From NCBI RefSeq assembly GCF_033153115.1, contig NW_026889758.1, forward strand, positions 36,518,001 to 36,582,000: a DNA stretch of 64,000 nt, in the 5' to 3' direction. Under the pieces are notes generated by a model. It saw nothing but the letters and a program-made list of their open reading frames with translations, was not told the origin of the DNA and searched no databases. Shown here one piece after another: positions 2,272 to 64,000 of the stretch. The translations under genes and the position numbers were made by a program. Positions within the stretch are counted from its first letter, which is position 1. Every line of letters starts with the position of its first letter. Origin of the DNA: Saccostrea echinata. Its lineage: Eukaryota.

Positions 2272-3721
2272 AAACCAGAAGTCTCTGATGAGACTGTAGC
2301 TCTACTGGTCTGTTTGTATAACAAAAGAAAAGTAGCACTTGGATTTGAAACATTGCAACATGCAACAATAAATAGAATTATGTATCTTAATGTAGTCTAC
2401 TTCTGTGCCAAGTTATATTGAAATCAAATGAAAACTGTAGGAGGAGTAGCGTTTTGAAAGTATTTCAGGGAAATTTCTATTTTTAGTAACCATGACAACA
2501 CCATTCACCCAAATAAAAAAAAACAGAAATACATATTATGTATCGTAGTATATTCTAACTGTGTGCCAAATTAGATTGAAATCAGACCAAAATTGTAGGA
2601 GGAGTAACGTTTAATGGGAATTTCACAAAAATTTCTATTTTAAGTAACCATGGCAACACTGTTCATTGAATTCAAAAACCAATGCAATAAATTATGTATC
2701 TTAGTATAGTCTTCTTGTATGCCTAATTATATTAAAAGCAGACTAAAACTGTAGCAGGAGTAGTGTTTTAAAGGAATTTCATAGAAATTTCTATTTTTAG
2801 TAACCATGGCAACACCGTCCATTGAATTCAAAAACCGATGCACTAAATTATGTATCTTAGTGTAGTCTACTTGTGTGCCAAGTTATATTGAAATCGGACC
2901 AAAACTGTAGGAGGAGTAGCATTTTAAAGGAATTTCACAGAAATTTATATTTTTAGTAACCATGGCAACACCGTCCATCGAAATCAAAAACCGATGCACT
3001 AAATTATGTATCTTAGTGTTGTCTACTTGTGTGCCAAGTTATATTGAAATCGGACCAAAACTGTAGGAGGAGTAGCATTTTAAAGGAATTTCAAAGAAAT
3101 TTCTATTTCTAGTAACCATGGCAACACCGTCCATCGAAATCAAAAACCGATGCACTAAATTATGTATCTTAGTGTAGTCTACTTGTGTGCCAAGTTATAT
3201 TGAAATCGGACCAAAACTGTAGGAGGAGTAGCGTTTTAAAGGAATTTCAAAGAAATTTCTATTTCTAGTAACCATGGCAACACTGTCCTTCGAAATCAAA
3301 AACCGATGCACTAAATTATGTATCTTAGTGTTGTCTACTTGTGTGCCAAGTTATATTGAAATCGGACCAAAACTGTAGGAGGAGTAGCATTTTAAAGGAA
3401 TTTCACAGAAATTTCTATTTTTAGTAACCATGGCAACACCGTCCATCAAAATCAAAAACCAATGCACTAATTTATGTATCTTAGTGTAGTCTACTTGTGT
3501 GCCAAGTTATATTGAAATCTGACCAAAACTGAAGGAGGAGTAGCGTTTTAAAGGAATTTCACAGAAATTTCTATTTTTAGTAACCATGGCAACACCGTCC
3601 ATCGAAATCAAAAATCGATGCACTAAATTATGTATCTTAGTGTAGTCTACTTGTGTGCCAAGTTATATTGAAATTGGACCAAAACTGTAGGAGGAGGAGC
3701 GTTTTGAAAAATTGTTTACAG

Positions 3722-3759
<38 letters not shown>

Positions 3760-3828
3760 GGACGGACGACGGACACCTTACTATCGCATAAGCTCTTCTG
3801 GTCTCTGACCAGTAGAGCTAAAAAAAAC
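2272..3828 (-). mobile_element. HINE/DINE-1-like non-autonomous Helentron element with central tandem array
   Basis: Read on the minus strand: T-run, subTIR agctctactggtc with partial inverted copy (3791-3819), (TCTG/TCCG)n microsatellite (~3718-3775), 156-bp tandem repeats, second subTIR (~2298-2310), short palindrome agtctc..gagact, then TTT. Confidence 0.85.
2377..3705. repeat. 156-bp tandem repeat array, ~8.5 units
   Basis: Marker GTAACCATGRCAAC at 2486, 2644, 2800, 2956, 3112, 3268, 3424 and 3580. Period is 156 (first unit 158). Confidence 0.95.
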
Positions 3829-53856: not shown

Positions 53857-56286
53857 AATAAGCCGAGTATTTGATACAAAAGACTGTATTCAGAAAAAGA
53901 GAAATGTATTGATTAAAGCACAAAATTTACAGCTTTAATTGTATTTGAACAATACCTTATTCATTATCTTTTTTCATGTCAGCAAGTTTATTACGAAGTA
54001 CAAATTGTACTTCGGGTTCGTTGCCACGATGCTCTCAGTGAGGAATATATACAATTTTTACCGCTAAATTCATTAGGAAAACCCAAGTACATATATTTAA
54101 TAATCTTTCGATATATAAATATATTCACAACTTACAGTGTTATCAATGATTTACTATTATTTCAATGACCATTCACACAAAAACTTTTTTATGTTCATGC
54201 GGCTATACTCGTCTCGTTTTTCTTTTTAACCTCGGGCTTGATGTTGTATGATGTTCCAGTAGCTTCCGTCAATATTAAGATCAGTGAATGACGAAAATAA
54301 TTTGCACATTTCCCTTTTCAATCGGTTTTCACAACTTATATCTTTTATATCATTTAAATCAAGTTTTGATTGAATAATTCAATGATGACGTCTTATGAAA
54401 TAAATAAACGATTGCTTTTTGTCAGTTTCATTAAAAATTGCCAGTAAATTAGATCCGCCAACCGGAAACGCCACCGTACTCACGTTTTTGCTATTTCATG
54501 GCTGTTTATAGAAAATGAAAGTAGACTTTTAATTTAATATACAATACTTACTATGCGAGTGAAATCTAAATATAGTTTACGGATATCATCTTGTATCTAG
54601 TCTATTCTTAAAGGAATTAGTTAGAACTCTGGTGCACCCGTTTCGGAGTTTAGTTGCAAAATTTATTAATTTATAAGTATAGAGTAGATAATCATCCCCC
54701 AGATGATTATTTTCTTTAACATTAAATCGAACAGAGGAGATTTTATACGAGAGTTGTCCGGTAAAATCGTGGACAAGTTGTCTAGAGTGAAAAATAATCA
54801 CCACTGCGTTCTAAAATTTTCACTATTGTTTAGTACATTTTTCATCAATATATATAGCAAATTTCAGAGATATGTGCTCAAATAAACAAAATATGAGACT
54901 TTATGTAATGTGTGGTATCGTCTTACGGCGCACGGATGATAATGTCAAAGTGTCCAAAGCAGCGTCACTTTTCCTCTTTGCTAAAAAAATTTGGATAAGC
55001 CCCACTTAAATTCGGTGATTTCATTGAGACACATACTTGAGTTTCCCTTTATTCCTCCATAAACAGTCGAGGAACCAATCTCGCACACACATGGGACCTT
55101 CTGAGGATTTATTAGTTGTGAACAGTACTCTCACTATCATTCAACTACATTGTAAATAGCCTATTGCCAGCTGTTTGTCCGTATGTTTTGCTCTACCCGG
55201 GGGACCCAATAAAAAAGCTTCCGCTTAGAAAACTCCCATTTCTATGGAACGCCATAGCTGCCTGTAGGTCACTTTTATATTTTATGAGGTGGTATAACCT
55301 TTATATAAAGAGATGAAATCATTATATATAGTGGTAAAATCATTATATTCAGTGATAACTTTATTATATGCAGTGGTTTTATCATTATATGCAGTGGTTT
55401 ATCGTTACATACAGTGGTTTCATCTTATATATATTGGCAACGTCATTATATGTAGTGGTTAAACAATGTAATGGAGTGATAATATCGTTATATTATGCTG
55501 TAAAATCATAATATGCAGTGGTTATTTCATCATATACATTAATGAAATCTTTATATACTGTGATAAGTTCAATATATACAGTTAAAACATAGTTTGTGTG
55601 AAACACGCTGCATGTCCAGTGCCAAGTTCATTTCATTCAGTGCGACACCTTTACATAAATTGAAAAAAAAATATTATGTGCAGTACTAAGATCATTATAT
55701 TATGTAGTAAAATTATTATGTATATTTTAAAATCATGCTATGCAGTGGTAATATCCTTATAAAAGGTGGTTAATAATTATATGTCGTGGTTAATTCATTA
55801 GATGAATAACATGAAACGACTAAAGCATATAAAGAATTGACCACTTTATAAAATGAATTAACAACGACATACAATTATTAACCACCTCATATAAAGATGT
55901 AACCACTGCATAGCATGATTTTAATATATATATGATAATTTTACTACATAATATAATGATTTTAGTACTGCACATAATATTTTTTTTCAATTCATGTAAA
56001 GGTGTCGCACCGAATGAAATGAACTTGGCACTGCACATGCAGCGTGTTTCATTTAGTGTAATGATTGCACTCTCACACAAACTATGTTTATAAATGTATA
56101 TATTGAACTTATCACATCATAGAAAGATTTCATTAATGTATGTAATGGAATAACCACTGCATATAATGATTTTACAGCATTATGTAACGGTACTATCACT
56201 TTATTACATTTTTTAACCACTATATATTATGATTGCGACTGTATATATTGATAAAACTACTGCATATAATAAAGTTATCACTGGAT

Positions 56287-56537
56287 ATAATACCGCATAT
56301 TTGAGCTCGTCTCACAATATGCGTCGTTATCAAAGCTCTACTCTGTTATTAATGTCATCATTCGCCTCTTATTTTGTGAGAAACTCATGATTGAGTAAAG
56401 TCGGAATTTTGTAATCCACCCATACAGTGTCGGTACTTAGTCACTATGTTTCCGGGTTATCTCCCCTTTTCTATGCATCAATGAAAGTGAAAGGTGGGTG
56501 ATGAAAGTATCTGATTTAATTTTTGTATTTTGAAATA
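56287..56537 (+). repeat. Split direct repeat A1 (251 bp)
   Basis: Reads identical to 61047-61297, constant offset 4760. Confidence 0.95.
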
Positions 56538-59500
56538 GTCTATCACAATTTATGTTTTTTAAAGTTAATTTTCAGGCAAAATAAGTAGCATTAATTATTT
56601 TATTGACATTTATATTGCTCGATGGCGAATATTTGATTGGATGGAAACAGATTGATTTGCCACCCCATTCTTCCATTGTACTGGCACATGTTACAAGGGA
56701 TAACAATGGCAATAACCAATTTCATCAACAGATTTTGAATAAAGAAAATGTTATTTAGTTGAATAATCTTAAAAAGAGAGCCATCGTGAAAATGATGATT
56801 ATTAAACTTCAAATTTATTCTGTACCCTTCTTCAAGGTCAAAAACGTATCTGGATATTTAGATACTTATATGTCCCTTGGCCACAGTATTTAGGGGAATA
56901 TCCATATTATTCTCACAGTGGCTTCTGTAACATAGATTTGTTATATATATTTATCAGTTTAATACTTGAAAACATTTAGTGACAAAAAAAAGGTTATTGT
57001 ACAAGGATAGTGCTACCCTGTACCTTTAAAGCAGTAAGTAAATAAATACAGATTGAAAATTAATTAGAATACAGTAAATCTATTGCAGCACATCCAAATG
57101 TTATATAGCGGAATTCACAAAGGGAAGTACTGTATTTATTTTTAAGTGTATACATAAATAATGGTTTATTTCCAATCAAGCCCCCCCCCCCCCTCCCCGA
57201 GAGGGATGAAAAAGATACATTTGTATACAAATGCAGTAATTAATTGTGATATAAAATCATGTAAAGTAAAATACATGCAGAGCAAGTTGTTGTGCTCTAC
57301 AATGTCGTATTACAAAAATGCATTATAATATGTATATGAATAAAACATAAGTAGAAGTGTCTATAATTTTCCACATATTTACTTTTGTCACATGTAGTGG
57401 CAAACCTCTAGGAAGGTTAAAATGAATGAATGAATGATGACTTAATATATTTGAGACATAAATATCAGTTGGATGGAAGCATTACAATGAGCAATTCAGG
57501 CTATTTAAAATGGAGGCATGAGCACCCTAAGTCGAATTGTACATTGTCCAAATCCACAATACAGTTAAATTTGAGCCAGCAGCATCCTCACCTATCAGGA
57601 TATCACTTCTCTTATAGGGCTTGGCAAGGAGGACAATTTCGGCCTCCACCAGACGGATAATAGAAGGGCATCGCAATTTAAAAACACAATTGTTCACCAG
57701 TTAGGGTAGATAGGATTCCCCATATTTTTAATAATTAGCTAAAATTCTATCAAGGCTAGCTACTGTTTTGCTTGTCGGATATCAAATGGGTTCAGACTAA
57801 TTAAGATGGGGTCAAAGACATGTTTCAGATATATATTCTGTGTCTGCTCATTGGTTCAGTTTTAAGATTATAAAGGAAATCAAGGAGGTTTGGGCTATTG
57901 GGTCATTTTCAAAACTGTGTCCACCTTGCATAATCATGAACTTCTCTAATAGAGCCTGTACTTTAATTGAGTGAAGGTTTAATGATAACATGTTTATTGT
58001 CCTCTCTCTCCTGCCCCCTAAGGCCCCTTGGGTATGATACATAAATTTATAGAGTTGTGTTAAGTAAAAGTTTTGTACCTTCTCAAGTTAACCTCAAAAA
58101 CTCAAATAAACTTACATTATTTTCACATTATATAGAATATTTCTCATTTAGGCTTGGGAAAGTGTTTGATTTTACATGTAGGAACTAATTTCATCATGGG
58201 AGTTTTCTCTCAATGTAATAAATTTAAAAAGCTTCTGGTCTTGTTTGATATTTTTAGGCACACAAGGGCCTTTTAGGTTCAAATATAAATACAATAATAC
58301 AAATAGTTTAAGTAATTAAATAAAAAAATAAATAAATAAATAGGTAAAATGAAATGCAGATAATTTTAGCAGAGCTTCAGGATAAAATTGTCACAGAAGA
58401 CATTTTAACTTGACAAGTTTATTAGAAATATGCACAGTTAATCCACTGAGTTATCTGTCTTATCAGAGGGTTGGTTAACCTTAAAATATGATTATGCAAC
58501 TTAAATTTCCTGACCTTTTACAATTTTACTCGAGTAACTTAGTTTTGACAAATGAATAAATTATAGGGTTCCTAAATTGTTACAGTCAATGCTGGCATAT
58601 TGGGACAGGGCTGTGGATGTGAATCTTTTGTTTTTTTGGTTGGGAAGGAACATTGATCAATGGTCAAGCAGTTTGGGGGAAAAAGGCTATAATAAAACAT
58701 TATGTAAAATTGGGGCCTAATTTTTGGTCCTTGATGGTTTCTGTTGTGTCTCTAAGTGGGAAAAATAAAATAAAAAGATTTGTAATTTAACTCAGGTAAA
58801 AATTGCTTTAGTTCAAATTTTAATTCACGGTTCTTAAACTCACAAAAGGTGATATGTTTGGGAAACTGGTTTTATTCATCATGAAATATAAAACATAAAA
58901 AACTGAGCATAAGGCAGGATTTATTATTAATCTGCTATGCAAGCAGATGCAAATTCTTGGGGTTGAAGGGGGAGGGGGGTTAGACATATATTGTTCCACA
59001 GACCTGAATTGAATAGAATCTGATCCATTTCCTGCAATGTTTTGTATGTAGTTTTCAGAAATGAGGCGACGGGTTTGTTAAAGACAGCAATTCTACAAAA
59101 ACTGCTGACACATATCATGCATATATCTAATGGGCATTTCTCCAATGAAAAATGTCAGTTCAAACCCAATTGCCAATTACATATATGTCATTGGTGTACA
59201 CCCCTCAACTAAGCAGTTAGCATACATGTACTTTTATAATTATGTTTATATATTAATGTCAAAGGTTATTCAGATGCATCTTCAATGCATATATAGTTTA
59301 CATCCATGTATCAGCTGGTGGGTACAACTGCAAATCTGAGGGAGTTAAAGATTCATTTTAGCAAAACTTCCCTAACATTTTAGGGTATTAAATAAAGGAT
59401 AGGTTGCCATTGCCTTAGCTCATACTTGGACAATTAATTTGTACACTGGCCTTCATATAATTATGCATATTTACAACTTTAAAACAGATTAAGTCCATAT

Positions 59501-60633
59501 CCCCCCCCCCCCCCCCACCTAGTCTTAACCATATTTTTGCCTTGGGGTGAGGGATGGGGGTAACCCATTCTTAATTAATGTTACAGTTTCAGTATTCCTG
59601 AAGTAAGAAGTTTAAGGTGACAAGTTGCAGTTTCTGAGAGAGCATCAGCTGGGCAAGGGTCTGGAATATAGAATTTAGTCCTATAGGTACTTCATGTCTG
59701 GTGCAGTACATGTACATTTACAAATACTTTGGAAACACTTCATAGTCCTCCATTGTGTCTCAAGACTCTTGGGTTGGAAGGTAATTAGTATACGTTTTAA
59801 TCAATTTTAAATGGAGAGGCTTTAGCAGAGCTTGGCTTCAGAAATAAGTGGTATGACCTCATTCCTTTAGAACCATCACAGCTACTGTTGAGCAAAAATG
59901 GTTTTCCAGATTAGGTAATAAAGATAGCAGGGAGATAGGTATCCCTTAATCTATTCTGGAATTTACAAAGTGGGAATGTGATAACACTTAACATTTTGTC
60001 ATTGCAACATTGTCAAGAATGCAGGAACTGCAGCCATATGCAGATGGGAAAAAGGGGGGGGGGGGGTAAAGGGGATTTGTGCCTGTTTATTACTTGTTTG
60101 CAATCTCAGCTGGAAAGTAGTTAAGAACTTTCCAAATTACTTTAAAAAAAATAAATAATGAATAAATTAAGTAAATAAATAGATGAATAAACAAATAAAT
60201 AAAAATACAAGAATAGGGTAAGTGGGGAGGAGATTGAAATTATTTACATATTTTCTTACACCAGGCTAGTTTAGTTCTTATTCATGCCTCAGTAATAATA
60301 ACCTGTCGTTACTAAAAATATTAGGGTAATAAAAAGACCCAAAGCAGAATAAACAAAAACTTGTACTAGATTCCAGGGAGGGGGTGGGGTGTTTTCAGGC
60401 ATACTTAATTTGTAGGGAAACTAGATCATTTATCTCAATACAGCAGGGATGGCTGATAAAGAATTGATTTAATCTTGTATTGAAGATATATTGAGTAGTG
60501 GAGACAATTAGAAAGTGGTTTTCACAGTGGGTGGGGTGCTGAGGGTTTTGAGTAGGCTAGGGGTCCACGGTGGGTGTTTAAATTGAAGCTGCCTACCCCC
60601 ACCAGGTGGCGGTGGGCATTTGCGGTGCCCATG

Positions 60634-61297
60634 TGGCGAAATCGTCACCTTCAATTTAACCATTGAACTATTTATATTCTTGACTTGTTGTGGTTGATGT
60701 TGATATATGTGATGGTTGATGTTGATATATGTGATGTTGACTTTGAAAATTATATCTCATATTGAGTAAATCTAAAGCAAAATTATGTAATATAATTGAT
60801 ATAATTAATTATAATTAATATAATTAAAGATAATTTGTGTTGAAATGTGTCCGTAGCACGATTGAGGTCAACCCAGCGTGCTACTTTTCCCGTCAGGGAG
60901 GGCACAACTTAATTGTTGATGTTGGGGGATGTGCCAGTTTGCCGGCTGCCCCACTGTTGTGTAGACCACTGTGGACAATACCTGCCAACTCGAATAAAAC
61001 ATATAAAATAAATAAGGCATTTGTTTTAAATATATTAAGGTCTTTGATAATACCGCATATTTGAGCTCGTCTCACAATATGCGTCGTTATCAAAGCTCTA
61101 CTCTGTTATTAATGTCATCATTCGCCTCTTATTTTGTGAGAAACTCATGATTGAGTAAAGTCGGAATTTTGTAATCCACCCATACAGTGTCGGTACTTAG
61201 TCACTATGTTTCCGGGTTATCTCCCCTTTTCTATGCATCAATGAAAGTGAAAGGTGGGTGATGAAAGTATCTGATTTAATTTTTGTATTTTGAAATA
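60634..61297 (+). repeat. Internal B1|A2 junction repeats
   Basis: B1 (418 bp) and A2 (251 bp) overlap at ATAAT 61047-61051. Confidence 0.95.
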
Positions 61298-61605
61298 CCC
61301 TCCCACCACAACCCTTGAGCTAGGTGTTTAAGTATACCCTTTCTCCTTTCGTACATCTACATAGTTTTACATGATTGGGCTATACCTATATTTATTGACA
61401 GTTATGGAAATGTTATTGAGATTCTTTTCTGCTTTGGGTTTTTTGTTTTTGTCTTTTCAGAAATTAGCGGTGCCGTTGAAGGAGACCAACGATGTTGATC
61501 AGGATTGCCTGTTATTTCCGTTTCGGACCTTTTGAATGATTTTGGGCCAAATACAGTATCCTTCCGAGGAGTTCGGGGAAAAACCATACTTCACAGTGGT
61601 CAGAT

Positions 61606-62023
61606 TGGCGAAATCGTCACCTTCAATTTAACCATTGAACTATTTATATTCTTGACTTGTTGTGGTTGATGTTGATATATGTGATGGTTGATGTTGATAT
61701 ATGTGATGTTGACTTTGAAAATTATATCTCATATTGAGTAAATCTAAAGCAAAATTATGTAATATAATTGATATAATTAATTATAATTAATATAATTAAA
61801 GATAATTTGTGTTGAAATGTGTCCGTAGCACGATTGAGGTCAACCCAGCGTGCTACTTTTCCCGTCAGGGAGGGCACAACTTAATTGTTGATGTTGGGGG
61901 ATGTGCCAGTTTGCCGGCTGCCCCACTGTTGTGTAGACCACTGTGGACAATACCTGCCAACTCGAATAAAACATATAAAATAAATAAGGCATTTGTTTTA
62001 AATATATTAAGGTCTTTGATAAT
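61606..62023 (+). repeat. Split direct repeat B2 (418 bp)
   Basis: Reads identical to 60634-61051, constant offset 972. Confidence 0.95.
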
Positions 62024-64000
62024 GATTTCACCACTATATATAATGACTTCACCACTTCATATAAAGGTTATACCACCTCATATAATATGAAAGTGACCTT
62101 CAGGCAGCTATGGCGTTCCATACATTTAACTTGTATACTAAAGATCTAGTGATTTTTTTTTAAATTTTTTTCTTCTGTAGTAATTTAAAGTTTCTTAGGG
62201 CGTCAGTACGACGTCTATATCAAACTGAACTGCTCTTCGATGTGTCGTAACGTCACCAAACGTCGCCATTTTTGGCTTGTTGATTTTACCACTTTCCCAT
62301 TTCAAATGCTCGGGAAACTGCGAAAAATTAAGCAAATGCCTTGAAAATTTTCAAAAGACGACATAATAGATAATGGATTAGAAATAGTATAATTTTTACC
62401 CCAACCTTTTCTATTCAGTCCTTTTATTTCGAAATAATGCTTATGTATTCGTAAATGAAACCCTGTTTTTTTTATTGTGCGCCGTAGGACCGTACCCAGT
62501 GTACATTCAAGCATAAAAAATCTTTATTTGTGTCTATATTTTATCCAAAATATTACGATGCACTTAAATATGATAAACAATTGCTGAAAATTTCAACTAA
62601 GTGTGCCCAATACTAGTATTTTTCGAGAAAAACGCTTTGTCCACGATTTTACCGGACAACCCTCGTGTGTACATGTATAGTAATTCATCTTTTAGGAAGT
62701 TTCAAAACAAAGTAAACCTTTTGGGGGAAAGATTTTCAAACAGATGATTTTCCACATAGAATGCAGGATTTGTATATGAATATTTTAAGAACACGATGAA
62801 ATTTATCCCTAAACAAGATTAACTGCTTTAATGTCAAACCTTTTGTTTGTAAACACCTGTCTAGCACCTGTCGATAAATGTGTAAAAACTTATTGTAATA
62901 TCTGTGGTAATATATGTAACTGTAACTTATAGGCCAAAGAGACATTCATATAATATGGCACCGGTAAAAGTTTCTGTTATCAAATCAAGCCTTTGGAAAA
63001 AAGTATTTTAGTTTTATGCATCTTTTTTGCGTAAAATGCACAAGACTAGCCATAAAAAACTTTCCATTTCAATCCTGATTGCAGATCATTTTTTTTACTG
63101 TTTACGAATTCGATACGGAGAGGAAAGAGAAATACTATTACTCAGTATTTCAATCCTACATCAAGTGAAAACAAAGAGGCAATACTGGGTATGTCGCCAG
63201 GTATGCTTGGCTCCTTAGTAATTTGTTGTAGAAAGACAACGACTATTATACAAGTAATTGTTTTCATAGAATATTCAATAAATACAATCATTTTACAGAA
63301 AACATAATAAATAACAAAAATTTTAATTTACTTAACATTAATTCTATATCCCAGTCCAAAATCATGGACGAACTACATGTAGTTTTTATCTTGATTATAA
63401 AATGTGTAGTTTTGAAGGTACACTTTAAGTTTCTAAAAAAAAAAAATCAGCATTTGTTATCAAATAATTATTAGTGAATATCGTATTCAACTTTTCTTCA
63501 CGTATTTTGTTTAATTATTCTCTAAGTAAGGGAAGCTCATATTTTCCTGTCATATCCTCGCTCGAAAAATGAGTGGAAACAATCTTATATACACTTAGCA
63601 GGATTGACAAAGATTGTAGGACTTACTTTAAATTCGTTAAGTTTACCATTCGAAAAAAAAAGAACTTGGCGTCCGAAATCTATTTGAAATTATTTTTGGT
63701 ATTTACGAAGCTTAGTTCAGGTATATTTTAATAGAAAAAAATGTCAGTTAATTGGTGTAAAAGTTGTGCAGATAAGACCAAAACGTGTCATAAATATGAG
63801 GTGTGACGTTTTCACCGTCAACAAGTAACGTGAACGACATTTTTGTACACTAGTAATTTCGGATGTTTTGTTCTAATTTAATGATCAAATAGTTCAAGAA
63901 GTAATACATTTAACAAACAGATAAATTGTATGACAAAAAATAATTAGCAATTTCCGTCAAAACAGATCTACGTGTGACGGCTTAAGGCAGCTTAGTAAAA

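What the first reader, a model, noticed from the sequence alone, without database searches (positions are those of the whole stretch)
61042..61095. The B|A recombination junction folds into an integron attC-like hairpin
Seen: CTTTGATAA-TAC-CGCATATT-TGAG-ctcgt-CTCA-C-AATATGCG-TCG-TTATCAAAG. This gives a 9-bp stem, a 3x3 unpaired spacer, an 8-bp stem, one extrahelical base, a 4-bp stem and a 5-nt loop. The full outer stem exists only when B is joined to A, and the crossover core ATAAT lies at the stem/spacer border. Established: integron IntI and Xer/CTX-phage systems recombine folded single-stranded sites built from two paired boxes, an unpaired central spacer and (for attC) extrahelical bases. 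DIRS/Ngaro integration is usually drawn with a double-stranded circle. Inference: this family may integrate a folded single-stranded cDNA junction, which would also explain needing only a few bases of target identity.
Basis: partly seen in the sequence, partly recalled or inferred. Interest (0 to 1): 0.82.

Follow-up and report, generated by a model that had tools for sequence, protein, structure and literature searches.

The report
Conserved hairpin at retrotransposon circle junction
The 54-base hairpin is real and lies exactly where the two ends of a tyrosine-recombinase retrotransposon are joined; the same two-tier fold, with the crossover at its inner spacer, recurs with compensating base changes in unrelated relatives, so a folded single-stranded joining or integration site is now testable but not shown.

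Summary
It spans the B1|A2 junction of a 5.7-kb non-coding element laid out A1-int-B1-A2-x-B2, which is young and multi-copy. An unfilled paralogue in the window and 40 copy ends place the crossover at ATAA^T, with no target duplication.

In other split-direct-repeat (SDR) families with RNase H, methyltransferase and tyrosine recombinase (YR), the junction carries the same design: outer stem, small mismatched spacer, inner stem, loop. These came from the same genome and from marine metagenome contigs. A model of that hairpin finds 42 copies, all on the recombinase-sense strand, with strong covariation in both stems.

The crossover lies at one spacer edge. It is on the 5' side in four families, including the window's, and on the 3' side in two.

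This supports a conserved junction module that most likely acts in a single-stranded state. It does not show attC-like integration. Neither of two other 5'-side families whose folds were compared base by base has an extrahelical base in the matching place. A splint for joining ends, as in DIRS-1, or duplex inverted binding arms remain open.

The parts
56287..56290 (+). Target-derived ATAA 4-mer at the left end; the crossover lies after 56290.
   Evidence: Left ends of 12 copies read ATAA (9), ATAT (2) or ATTT (1) before T-ACCGC, so this 4-mer comes from the target. The unfilled paralogue has a single ATAAT.
56291..56537 (+). A1, the left terminal repeat. It holds a copy of the inner hairpin (56294-56323) and of the outer 3' arm (56327-56335) but lacks the B-derived 5' arm.
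   Evidence: 100% identical to 61051-61297.
56538..60633 (+). Internal region of 4,096 bp, non-coding.
   Evidence: No open frame over 76 aa. tblastn with the frames of 12 recombinase loci of this genome found nothing. No Rfam match.
60634..61050 (+). B1, the internal copy of the right terminal repeat. Its last 9 bases (61042-61050) form the outer 5' arm of the hairpin.
   Evidence: 100% identical to 61606-62022.
61042..61095 (+). The two-tier junction hairpin: outer stem 61042-61050 with 61087-61095; spacers 61051-61053 and 61084-61086; inner stem 61054-61065 with 61071-61083, with C 61075 unpaired; loop 61066-61070. The crossover lies between 61050 and 61051.
61051..61297 (+). A2, the internal copy of the left terminal repeat.
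61298..61605 (+). x, 308 bp between A2 and B2 and absent after A1. It is present at this position in all five other copies whose 3' region was recovered in the 7-10-kb loci. I infer that it is the rest of a longer ancestral A.
   Evidence: The L034 copy has an extra A-x-B unit.
61606..62022 (+). B2, the right terminal repeat. The element ends at ...CTTTGATAA, and base 62023 belongs to the target.
   Evidence: 28 right ends all read ATAA followed by T (19), A (5) or C (4).
55231..55460 (-). Unfilled paralogue of the insertion site, in inverted orientation, lying in a short tandem-like repeat.
   Evidence: It aligns colinearly with the left flank plus the right flank when one ATAAT is kept.

Best explanation
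The hairpin is this family's version of a self-complementary circle-junction module shared by SDR retrotransposons of the DIRS order.

Shown: the module is two stacked stems separated by a small mismatched spacer, and the element/target crossover lies at one edge of that spacer.

Inferred: the module works while the nucleic acid is single-stranded, in a replication intermediate. It holds the last bases of B next to the first bases of A so that the ends can be completed and joined into a circle. This is the job assigned to the internal complementary region of DIRS-1. The same sequence then marks where the recombinase exchanges strands with a short ATAA-like target.

Open: whether that final exchange uses the folded strand or a duplex circle.

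The window copy encodes no protein and must be mobilised in trans.
For: Anatomy and crossover.

The family is young and multi-copy with the same layout.

The same design occurs at B|A in other families.
- L113 and L106: the last 10 nt of B pair with A at +42 and enclose a 9-bp hairpin. Two base pairs differ compensatorily between the two loci.
- L075/L077.
- L073/L076/L079/L119: two independent left ends and two right ends show that the outer 5' arm is replaced by target DNA away from the junction.
- L043/L045 and L042: the inner hairpin ends B, and the outer 3' arm is the first ~10 nt of A.

Model R1 finds 42 copies on the recombinase-sense strand, most of them 72-277 nt past the recombinase match.

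Covariation: 83.5% of cells are paired against 67% in shuffles (0 of 500 reach it), 13 of 16 pairs change on both sides, and single positions carry up to four pair types.

The junction hairpin is the strongest in the 3' non-coding region in 3 of 6 other family representatives (chance p about 0.01).

One-base mismatches and helix-end appositions are G.T 13 times and A.C never.

Literature: the DIRS-1 ICR is essential, its cDNA is single-stranded, and its circle junction is self-complementary (PMC7192593). The 3-bp AAT-type junction with no target duplication is known (PMC3266345).
Against: - There is no biochemical or read-level evidence. The public runs were available only as contigs.
- Inverted protein-binding arms in duplex DNA would also covary.
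- The better folding of the sense strand is mostly base composition (G 301 against C 160). After correcting for that, p = 0.036 with DNA parameters and 0.52 with RNA parameters.
- The G.T count includes related sequences and conserved spacer bases.
- The crossover was mapped in only six families.
- The window hairpin is analogous to the conserved hairpin, not detectably homologous.
- No autonomous partner of the window family was found.
Confidence: 0.5

Rival explanations
1. attC-like integration. The folded single strand is itself the recombinase substrate. The outer and inner stems act as the two binding boxes of a pseudo-duplex core site, one strand is exchanged with the duplex target, and replication resolves the product.
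For: - The design is two boxes, an unpaired spacer and a loop, with the crossover at a spacer edge.
- The 5'-side crossovers (window, L075, L113/L106, L076 family) and the 3'-side crossovers (L043, L042) lie diagonally across the spacer. This is where a tyrosine recombinase would cut the two strands of a core site.
- The end sequences behave like a point crossover. The left 4-mer follows the target in 3 of 12 copies, while the right 4-mer is the element's own in 28 of 28 (p = 0.022). The fifth base varies only on the right (p = 0.037).
- DIRS-1 intermediates are single-stranded.
Against: - Not testable here.
- No extra base in the matching place in L075 or L113, and spacers vary from 1 to 6 nt.
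- The implied overlap of about 3 nt is far shorter than the 6-8 bp of characterised tyrosine recombinases (my knowledge).
- The weak strand signal favours the sense strand, whereas the known DIRS-1 single-stranded cDNA is antisense.
Confidence: 0.2
2. Duplex site only. The palindrome is two inverted copies of recombinase-binding sequences in a double-stranded circle, and no fold is ever used.
For: - Classical tyrosine-recombinase sites are inverted repeats (my knowledge), and arms bound by one protein co-evolve.
- L043 has a small local palindrome centred on the spacer next to its crossover, with the crossover about 4 nt to one side.
- The standard DIRS model assumes a duplex circle.
Against: - The inverted arms lie 35-45 bp apart. 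The sequence immediately 3' of the crossover is not an inverted copy of the B arm in the window or in L113.
- Positions that vary freely among families (up to four pair types) still stay complementary in 91.5% of inner-stem cells. Uncontacted positions of two separate binding sites would not need to do this.
- G.T 13 against A.C 0.
Confidence: 0.2
3. An element of the sense RNA, for reverse-transcriptase recognition, self-priming or packaging. Its overlap with the junction would be incidental.
For: - All 42 R1 matches are on the sense strand, and the loop is conserved and asymmetric.
- There is a G.U-type bias.
- A 3' hairpin has been suggested as the primer for DIRS-1.
- In the 3'-side families the inner hairpin is the very end of the element.
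Against: - It does not explain why the crossover falls at a spacer edge in all six mapped families.
- It does not explain why the complete fold needs B joined to A.
- The composition-corrected strand test with RNA parameters is null.
Confidence: 0.08
4. A chance palindrome in AT-rich repeat DNA.
For: Ten equally strong hairpins occur in the 64-kb window.
Against: It coincides exactly with the junction (p about 0.002-0.005), and the same design recurs in five other families.
Confidence: 0.02

Closest known systems
DIRS-1 internal complementary region and circle junction (Cappello 1985 model; Malicki 2020, PMC7192593; Piednoel 2011, PMC3266345)
   Same: It belongs to a tyrosine-recombinase retroelement. 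An internal copy of the joined ends is needed to rebuild the element. The junction is self-complementary, target identity is short (an AAT-type core), there is no target duplication, and the intermediates are single-stranded.
   Different: DIRS-1 has inverted terminal repeats, so its junction palindrome is centred on the crossover. Here the terminal repeats are direct, and the palindrome is a compact two-tier hairpin with the crossover 20-35 nt off centre, at a spacer edge.
Split direct repeats of Ngaro and PAT elements (A1-ORFs-B1A2B2; PMC9210276, PMC4157794, PMC8547959)
   Same: The repeat layout and the position just after the recombinase gene in the coding relatives.
   Different: I found no description of a junction hairpin in the open-access papers searched. 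The window copy has no ORFs and carries an extra 308 bp (x) between A2 and B2.
Integron attC sites recombined as folded bottom strands by IntI (my knowledge, not tested here)
   Same: Two paired boxes, an unpaired central spacer, a variable loop, and the crossover in the basal box next to the spacer.
   Different: No extra base in the matching place in L075 or L113, no R/L box consensus, and a eukaryotic retroelement recombinase of unknown mechanism. In two families the crossover lies on the other side of the spacer.
CTX-phage attP(+) folded single strand recombined by XerCD (my knowledge)
   Same: A folded single strand recreates a core site with a mismatched centre.
   Different: There the fold pairs two separate inverted dif-like sites of a phage genome that is naturally single-stranded. 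No such strandedness is shown here.
Duplex core sites such as loxP, FRT and dif (my knowledge)
   Same: Inverted arms and a crossover at the edge of a central region.
   Different: In those sites the arms abut a 6-8-bp overlap. Here the partner arm lies 35-45 bp away.

Membership tests
SDR retrotransposon of the DIRS order (Ngaro or PAT type) | Repeat layout A1 ... B1-A2-B2 with A1=A2 and B1=B2 | tested here: met
   Both repeat pairs are 100% identical. All five other copies whose 3' region was recovered have the same layout. There is an extra 308 bp between A2 and B2.
SDR retrotransposon of the DIRS order (Ngaro or PAT type) | Insertion without target duplication, at a short identity shared by the circle junction and the target | tested here: met
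   The unfilled paralogue has one ATAAT. 12 left and 28 right ends were examined.
SDR retrotransposon of the DIRS order (Ngaro or PAT type) | Encodes reverse transcriptase/RNase H and a tyrosine recombinase | tested here: not met
   No frame over 76 aa and no tblastn remnant. The longer copies L031 and L032 carry non-coding insertions. At best the family is a non-autonomous derivative.
SDR retrotransposon of the DIRS order (Ngaro or PAT type) | An autonomous relative with matching termini exists | tested here: inconclusive
   None among 12 recombinase loci of this genome. The genome has about 693 recombinase candidates, but no more DNA could be fetched.
   No match in the window at E up to 0.1. 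The window hairpin shares the design, not the sequence.
attC-like folded single-stranded recombination site | Two paired boxes separated by an unpaired spacer, with the crossover in the basal box next to the spacer | tested here: met
   This is a structural resemblance only.
attC-like folded single-stranded recombination site | Extrahelical bases at a conserved position | tested here: not met
   C 61075 has no counterpart in the folds of L075 or L113. The other families were not compared for this feature.
attC-like folded single-stranded recombination site | The recombinase acts on the folded single strand and exchanges one strand | not testable with these tools
   The only support is indirect: the end sequences behave like a point crossover.

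The most novel reading that the evidence does not exclude
The two-tier hairpin is a folded pseudo-duplex core site for the retroelement's tyrosine recombinase. The outer and inner stems are the two binding boxes and the small internal loop is an overlap of about 3 nt. Families differ only in which 'strand' of the fold is exchanged: the 5' edge of the spacer in the window family, L075, L113 and the L076 family, and the 3' edge in L043 and L042. DIRS-order elements would then integrate, or close their circles, through single-stranded DNA, as integron cassettes and CTX phage do.
Probability: 0.2. Interest if true: 0.85.

Novelty: new variant of a known kind. Interest (0 to 1): 0.62.

Why it matters
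How DIRS, PAT and Ngaro elements close their circles and integrate is unknown. No recombinase of this order has a defined DNA site, and work on DIRS-1 has shown single-stranded cDNA intermediates without reaching the integration step.

A compact junction hairpin that covaries, with crossover points mapped to the base in several families, gives a concrete substrate for biochemistry. It suggests how direct-repeat and inverted-repeat architectures can do the same job, because a palindromic junction is both a direct and a complementary copy of the joined ends. If the folded-strand reading holds, single-strand tyrosine recombination would extend from bacterial integrons and phages to animal retroelements.

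Tried and rejected
1. Coding remnants in the 4.1-kb interior. None was found by ORF listing or by tblastn with the frames of 12 recombinase loci.
2. The longer copies L031 and L032 as possible autonomous parents. They carry non-coding insertions.
3. The divergent copies L024, L026 and L030. They belong to the same non-autonomous family.
4. Fetching 20 further recombinase loci of the genome.
5. The look-up of encoding contigs for bivalve relatives of the recombinase.
6. L104 and L130 as SDR junctions. I rejected both. The 29-bp repeat in L104 is not a clean B, and its conserved hairpin lies 90 nt further on. L130 is a copy of the L124 family with a broken B2. The L124 crossover stays ambiguous by 11 nt.
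7. The Ngaro-like L037/L038 family. Its right end could be mapped, but no internal B copy lies in the locus, so there is no junction to examine.
8. The strand test by folding energy. It is mostly explained by G>C composition.
9. G.T against A.C counts on the model-fitted alignment. These are unreliable because the outer-stem register shifts with spacer length, so I used per-sequence Watson-Crick folds instead.
10. Within-family substitutions in the hairpin. They are scattered single hits in decaying copies and are uninformative.
11. Public runs. Only contigs were available, so transcript ends, strand and circular forms could not be read.
12. Rfam. No match.

Full report
OBSERVATION

Folded as single-stranded DNA, the minimum-energy structure is the described one:
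- a 9-bp outer stem, plus one T.G pair;
- a 2-3-nt mismatched spacer on each side;
- an 8-bp stem;
- one unpaired C;
- a 4-bp stem;
- a 5-nt loop.

The energy is -15.7 kcal/mol, z is -6.1, and none of 200 shuffles folds as well.

CONTEXT

The hairpin spans the B1|A2 junction of an element laid out as follows:

| Part | Coordinates |
|---|---|
| A1 | 56291-56537 |
| interior | 56538-60633 |
| B1 | 60634-61050 |
| A2 | 61051-61297 |
| x | 61298-61605 |
| B2 | 61606-62022 |

- A1 equals A2 and B1 equals B2, both at 100% identity.
- The interior has no open frame longer than 76 aa and no remnant of recombinase-locus proteins.
- The genome is 923 Mb. The closest relatives of its recombinases are bivalve proteins.
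- It holds at least 23 junction copies at 95-100% identity. All five other copies whose 3' region was recovered in the 7-10-kb loci have the same layout, x included.
- One copy has an extra A-x-B unit (L034). One lacks A2-x-B2 (L054). Unequal and equal recombination between the repeats would produce these two forms.

An inverted paralogue of the target lies in the window at 55231-55460. It is unfilled and has a single ATAAT where the filled site has one at each end. There is therefore no target duplication.

CROSSOVER

Across 12 left ends and 28 right ends:
- the right end is always ...CTTTGATAA followed by T (19), A (5) or C (4);
- the left end is ATAA (9), ATAT (2) or ATTT (1) followed by T-ACCGC.

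One copy sits in an (AT)n tract and shows that the left 4-mer comes from the target. The exchange therefore behaves as a point between ATAA and T. Variants of the 4-mer occur only on the left (Fisher p = 0.022), and variants of the fifth base occur only on the right (p = 0.037). In the fold, this point is the inner end of the 5' arm of the outer stem.

IS IT MORE THAN CHANCE?

- Ten places in the window fold as well or better in 60-nt frames, which is 0.34% of frames.
- It is the single best hairpin in its 1.2-kb non-coding neighbourhood.
- A perfect 9-bp helix ending at the crossover arises in 0.45% of shuffles of A.
- The duplex energy of the B end against A gives p = 0.002.

OTHER FAMILIES

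I therefore used 12 recombinase loci of this genome and 80 metagenome contigs that encode relatives of one of those recombinases.

L042, L043 and L045 encode an RNase H, a Dam-like methyltransferase and a tyrosine recombinase, followed by B1-A2-B2. That makes them PAT-like members of the DIRS order.

Crossover on the 5' side, after the outer 5' arm, as in the window:
- **L113 and L106.** The last 10 nt of B pair with A at +42 and enclose a 9-bp hairpin. One outer and one inner pair differ compensatorily between the two loci.
- **L075/L077**.
- **L073/L076/L079/L119.** Two independent left ends and two right ends show that the outer 5' arm is replaced by target DNA everywhere except at B|A. The shared core is AAA.

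Crossover on the 3' side:
- **L043/L045 and L042.** The inner hairpin is the end of B, and the first ~10 nt of A supply the outer 3' arm. The full fold again needs B joined to A, and the B2|flank copies lack it.

L124/L130/L111 have the hairpin, but the crossover is uncertain by 11 nt. I discarded L104 and L130 as mis-defined junctions.

In three of six other family representatives, the junction hairpin is the strongest in the whole 3' non-coding region (chance p about 0.01).

CONSERVATION

Twenty-two of these hairpins align, with a conserved asymmetric loop. A covariance model built from them finds 42 matches in 396 kb. All are on the recombinase-sense strand. Most lie 72-277 nt after the recombinase match, and some lie at the 5' end of elements, which is what A1 copies would give. 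The model finds nothing in the window.

Pair counts:

| Measure | Observed | Shuffled |
|---|---|---|
| cells paired | 83.5% | 67% (0 of 500 shuffles reach the observed value) |
| covariation score | 0.419 | 0.13 |
| pairs with changes on both sides | 13 of 16 | 9.9 on average (2 of 500 shuffles reach 13) |
| inner stem paired | 91.5% | not computed |
| outer stem paired | 71% | not computed |

Single positions carry up to four pair types. The window hairpin, like that of L113/L106, shares the design rather than the sequence.

SINGLE STRAND OR DUPLEX, AND WHICH STRAND

Inverted binding arms in duplex DNA would also covary, so covariation alone does not prove a fold. Two points favour a folded state:
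- positions that vary freely among families nevertheless stay complementary;
- one-base mismatches and helix-end appositions are G.T 13 times and A.C never (binomial p = 0.0002, inflated by relatedness among the sequences).

The sense strand folds better in 18-20 of 22 cases. Most of that is base composition, and after correction p = 0.036 with DNA parameters and 0.52 with RNA parameters. The published single-stranded DIRS-1 cDNA is antisense.

Public runs were available only as contigs. They show the B-A-x part at 3-10 times the depth of the interior. In the two long contigs that span it (743 and 799 nt, runs X1 and X2, both organism A), none of the listed differences falls in 61042-61095.

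KNOWN BIOLOGY

From the open-access literature:
- The DIRS-1 ICR is essential.
- The DIRS-1 cDNA is single-stranded and mostly linear.
- The DIRS-1 circle junction is self-complementary.
- DIRS1-like elements recombine at a 3-bp AAT-type junction, without target duplication.

I found no description of a hairpin at the junction of SDR elements in these papers. Key reviews that are not open access could not be read.

MECHANISM

My best reading, at confidence 0.5, is that the hairpin is a junction module acting in a single-stranded intermediate. It holds the B end beside the A start, so the ends can be completed and joined, as the ICR does in DIRS-1. It also marks the recombinase crossover.

A palindromic junction is both a direct and a complementary copy of the joined ends. 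This would let a direct-repeat element use the splint logic of DIRS-1.

Other readings:

| Reading | Confidence | Main points |
|---|---|---|
| attC-like integration | 0.2 | Fits the design, the diagonal placement of the two crossover types across the spacer, and the point-like crossover. No extra base in the matching place in L075 or L113. Needs an overlap of about 3 nt. |
| duplex site only | 0.2 | see rival explanations |
| purely RNA role | 0.08 | see rival explanations |
| chance | 0.02 | see rival explanations |

VERDICT

The proposed comparative test is positive as far as it could be run, but the mechanism is not shown.
- Novelty: a new variant of a known kind.
- Interest: 0.62.

Noticed in passing
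window 61598, with runs X1 and X2: The most abundant contigs cover B-A-x and then leave the window sequence at 61598, 8 bp before B2, running into unrelated sequence that begins AAACTTGTCCAG. This sequence is in none of the loci held. It could be the 5' interior of the missing autonomous partner, which would make A+x its full A repeat, or it could be a splice, since GT follows 61598.
   Followed up: partly
window 60634-61662 compared with 56538-60633: In all four public runs the B-A-x part is 3-10 times deeper than the interior. This fits many solo or tandem A-x-B units. L034 has an extra unit.
   Followed up: partly
L119 and L079, compared with L076: In the L076 family, two copies are plain A...B insertions with no internal B|A copy after the recombinase gene, while L076 has the junction. 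Both forms therefore coexist, as with L054 in the window family.
   Followed up: partly
window 55243-55650, 56000-56291, 62019-62130: The target is a short tandem-like repeat (units containing ACCACT..ATATAATGA) that occurs twice in inverted orientation about 0.4 kb apart. The element sits in one of its TATAAT motifs.
   Followed up: partly
window 25589, 26489, 27661, 28965, 39457, 42069, 45545: Seven long near-perfect hairpins, stronger than the junction hairpin (-16 to -25 kcal/mol in 60 nt). Several share a GCGAAGC/GCTTCGC-type apex and belong to repeats seen at 26.1-26.6 kb and 41.7-43.8 kb. They are probably palindromic miniature elements.
   Followed up: no
window 2376-3770: A 156-bp satellite array of about 9 units at 72-87% identity.
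   Followed up: no
L044: A Crypton-type gene (DUF3504 plus tyrosine recombinase, 516 aa), flanked by 200-bp palindromic repeats, in the same genome.
   Followed up: no
L037 and L038: An Ngaro-like family (reverse transcriptase, recombinase and a third 208-aa frame) whose two copies diverge at ...GATTCAATTAA. No internal copy of that end lies within the 3.4-kb loci.
   Followed up: partly
L046: A 2.1-kb element with A1, a 168-aa frame, a recombinase gene and B1-A2-x-B2, but no reverse transcriptase. It is a short derivative with the same repeat logic as the window element, including an x segment.
   Followed up: no
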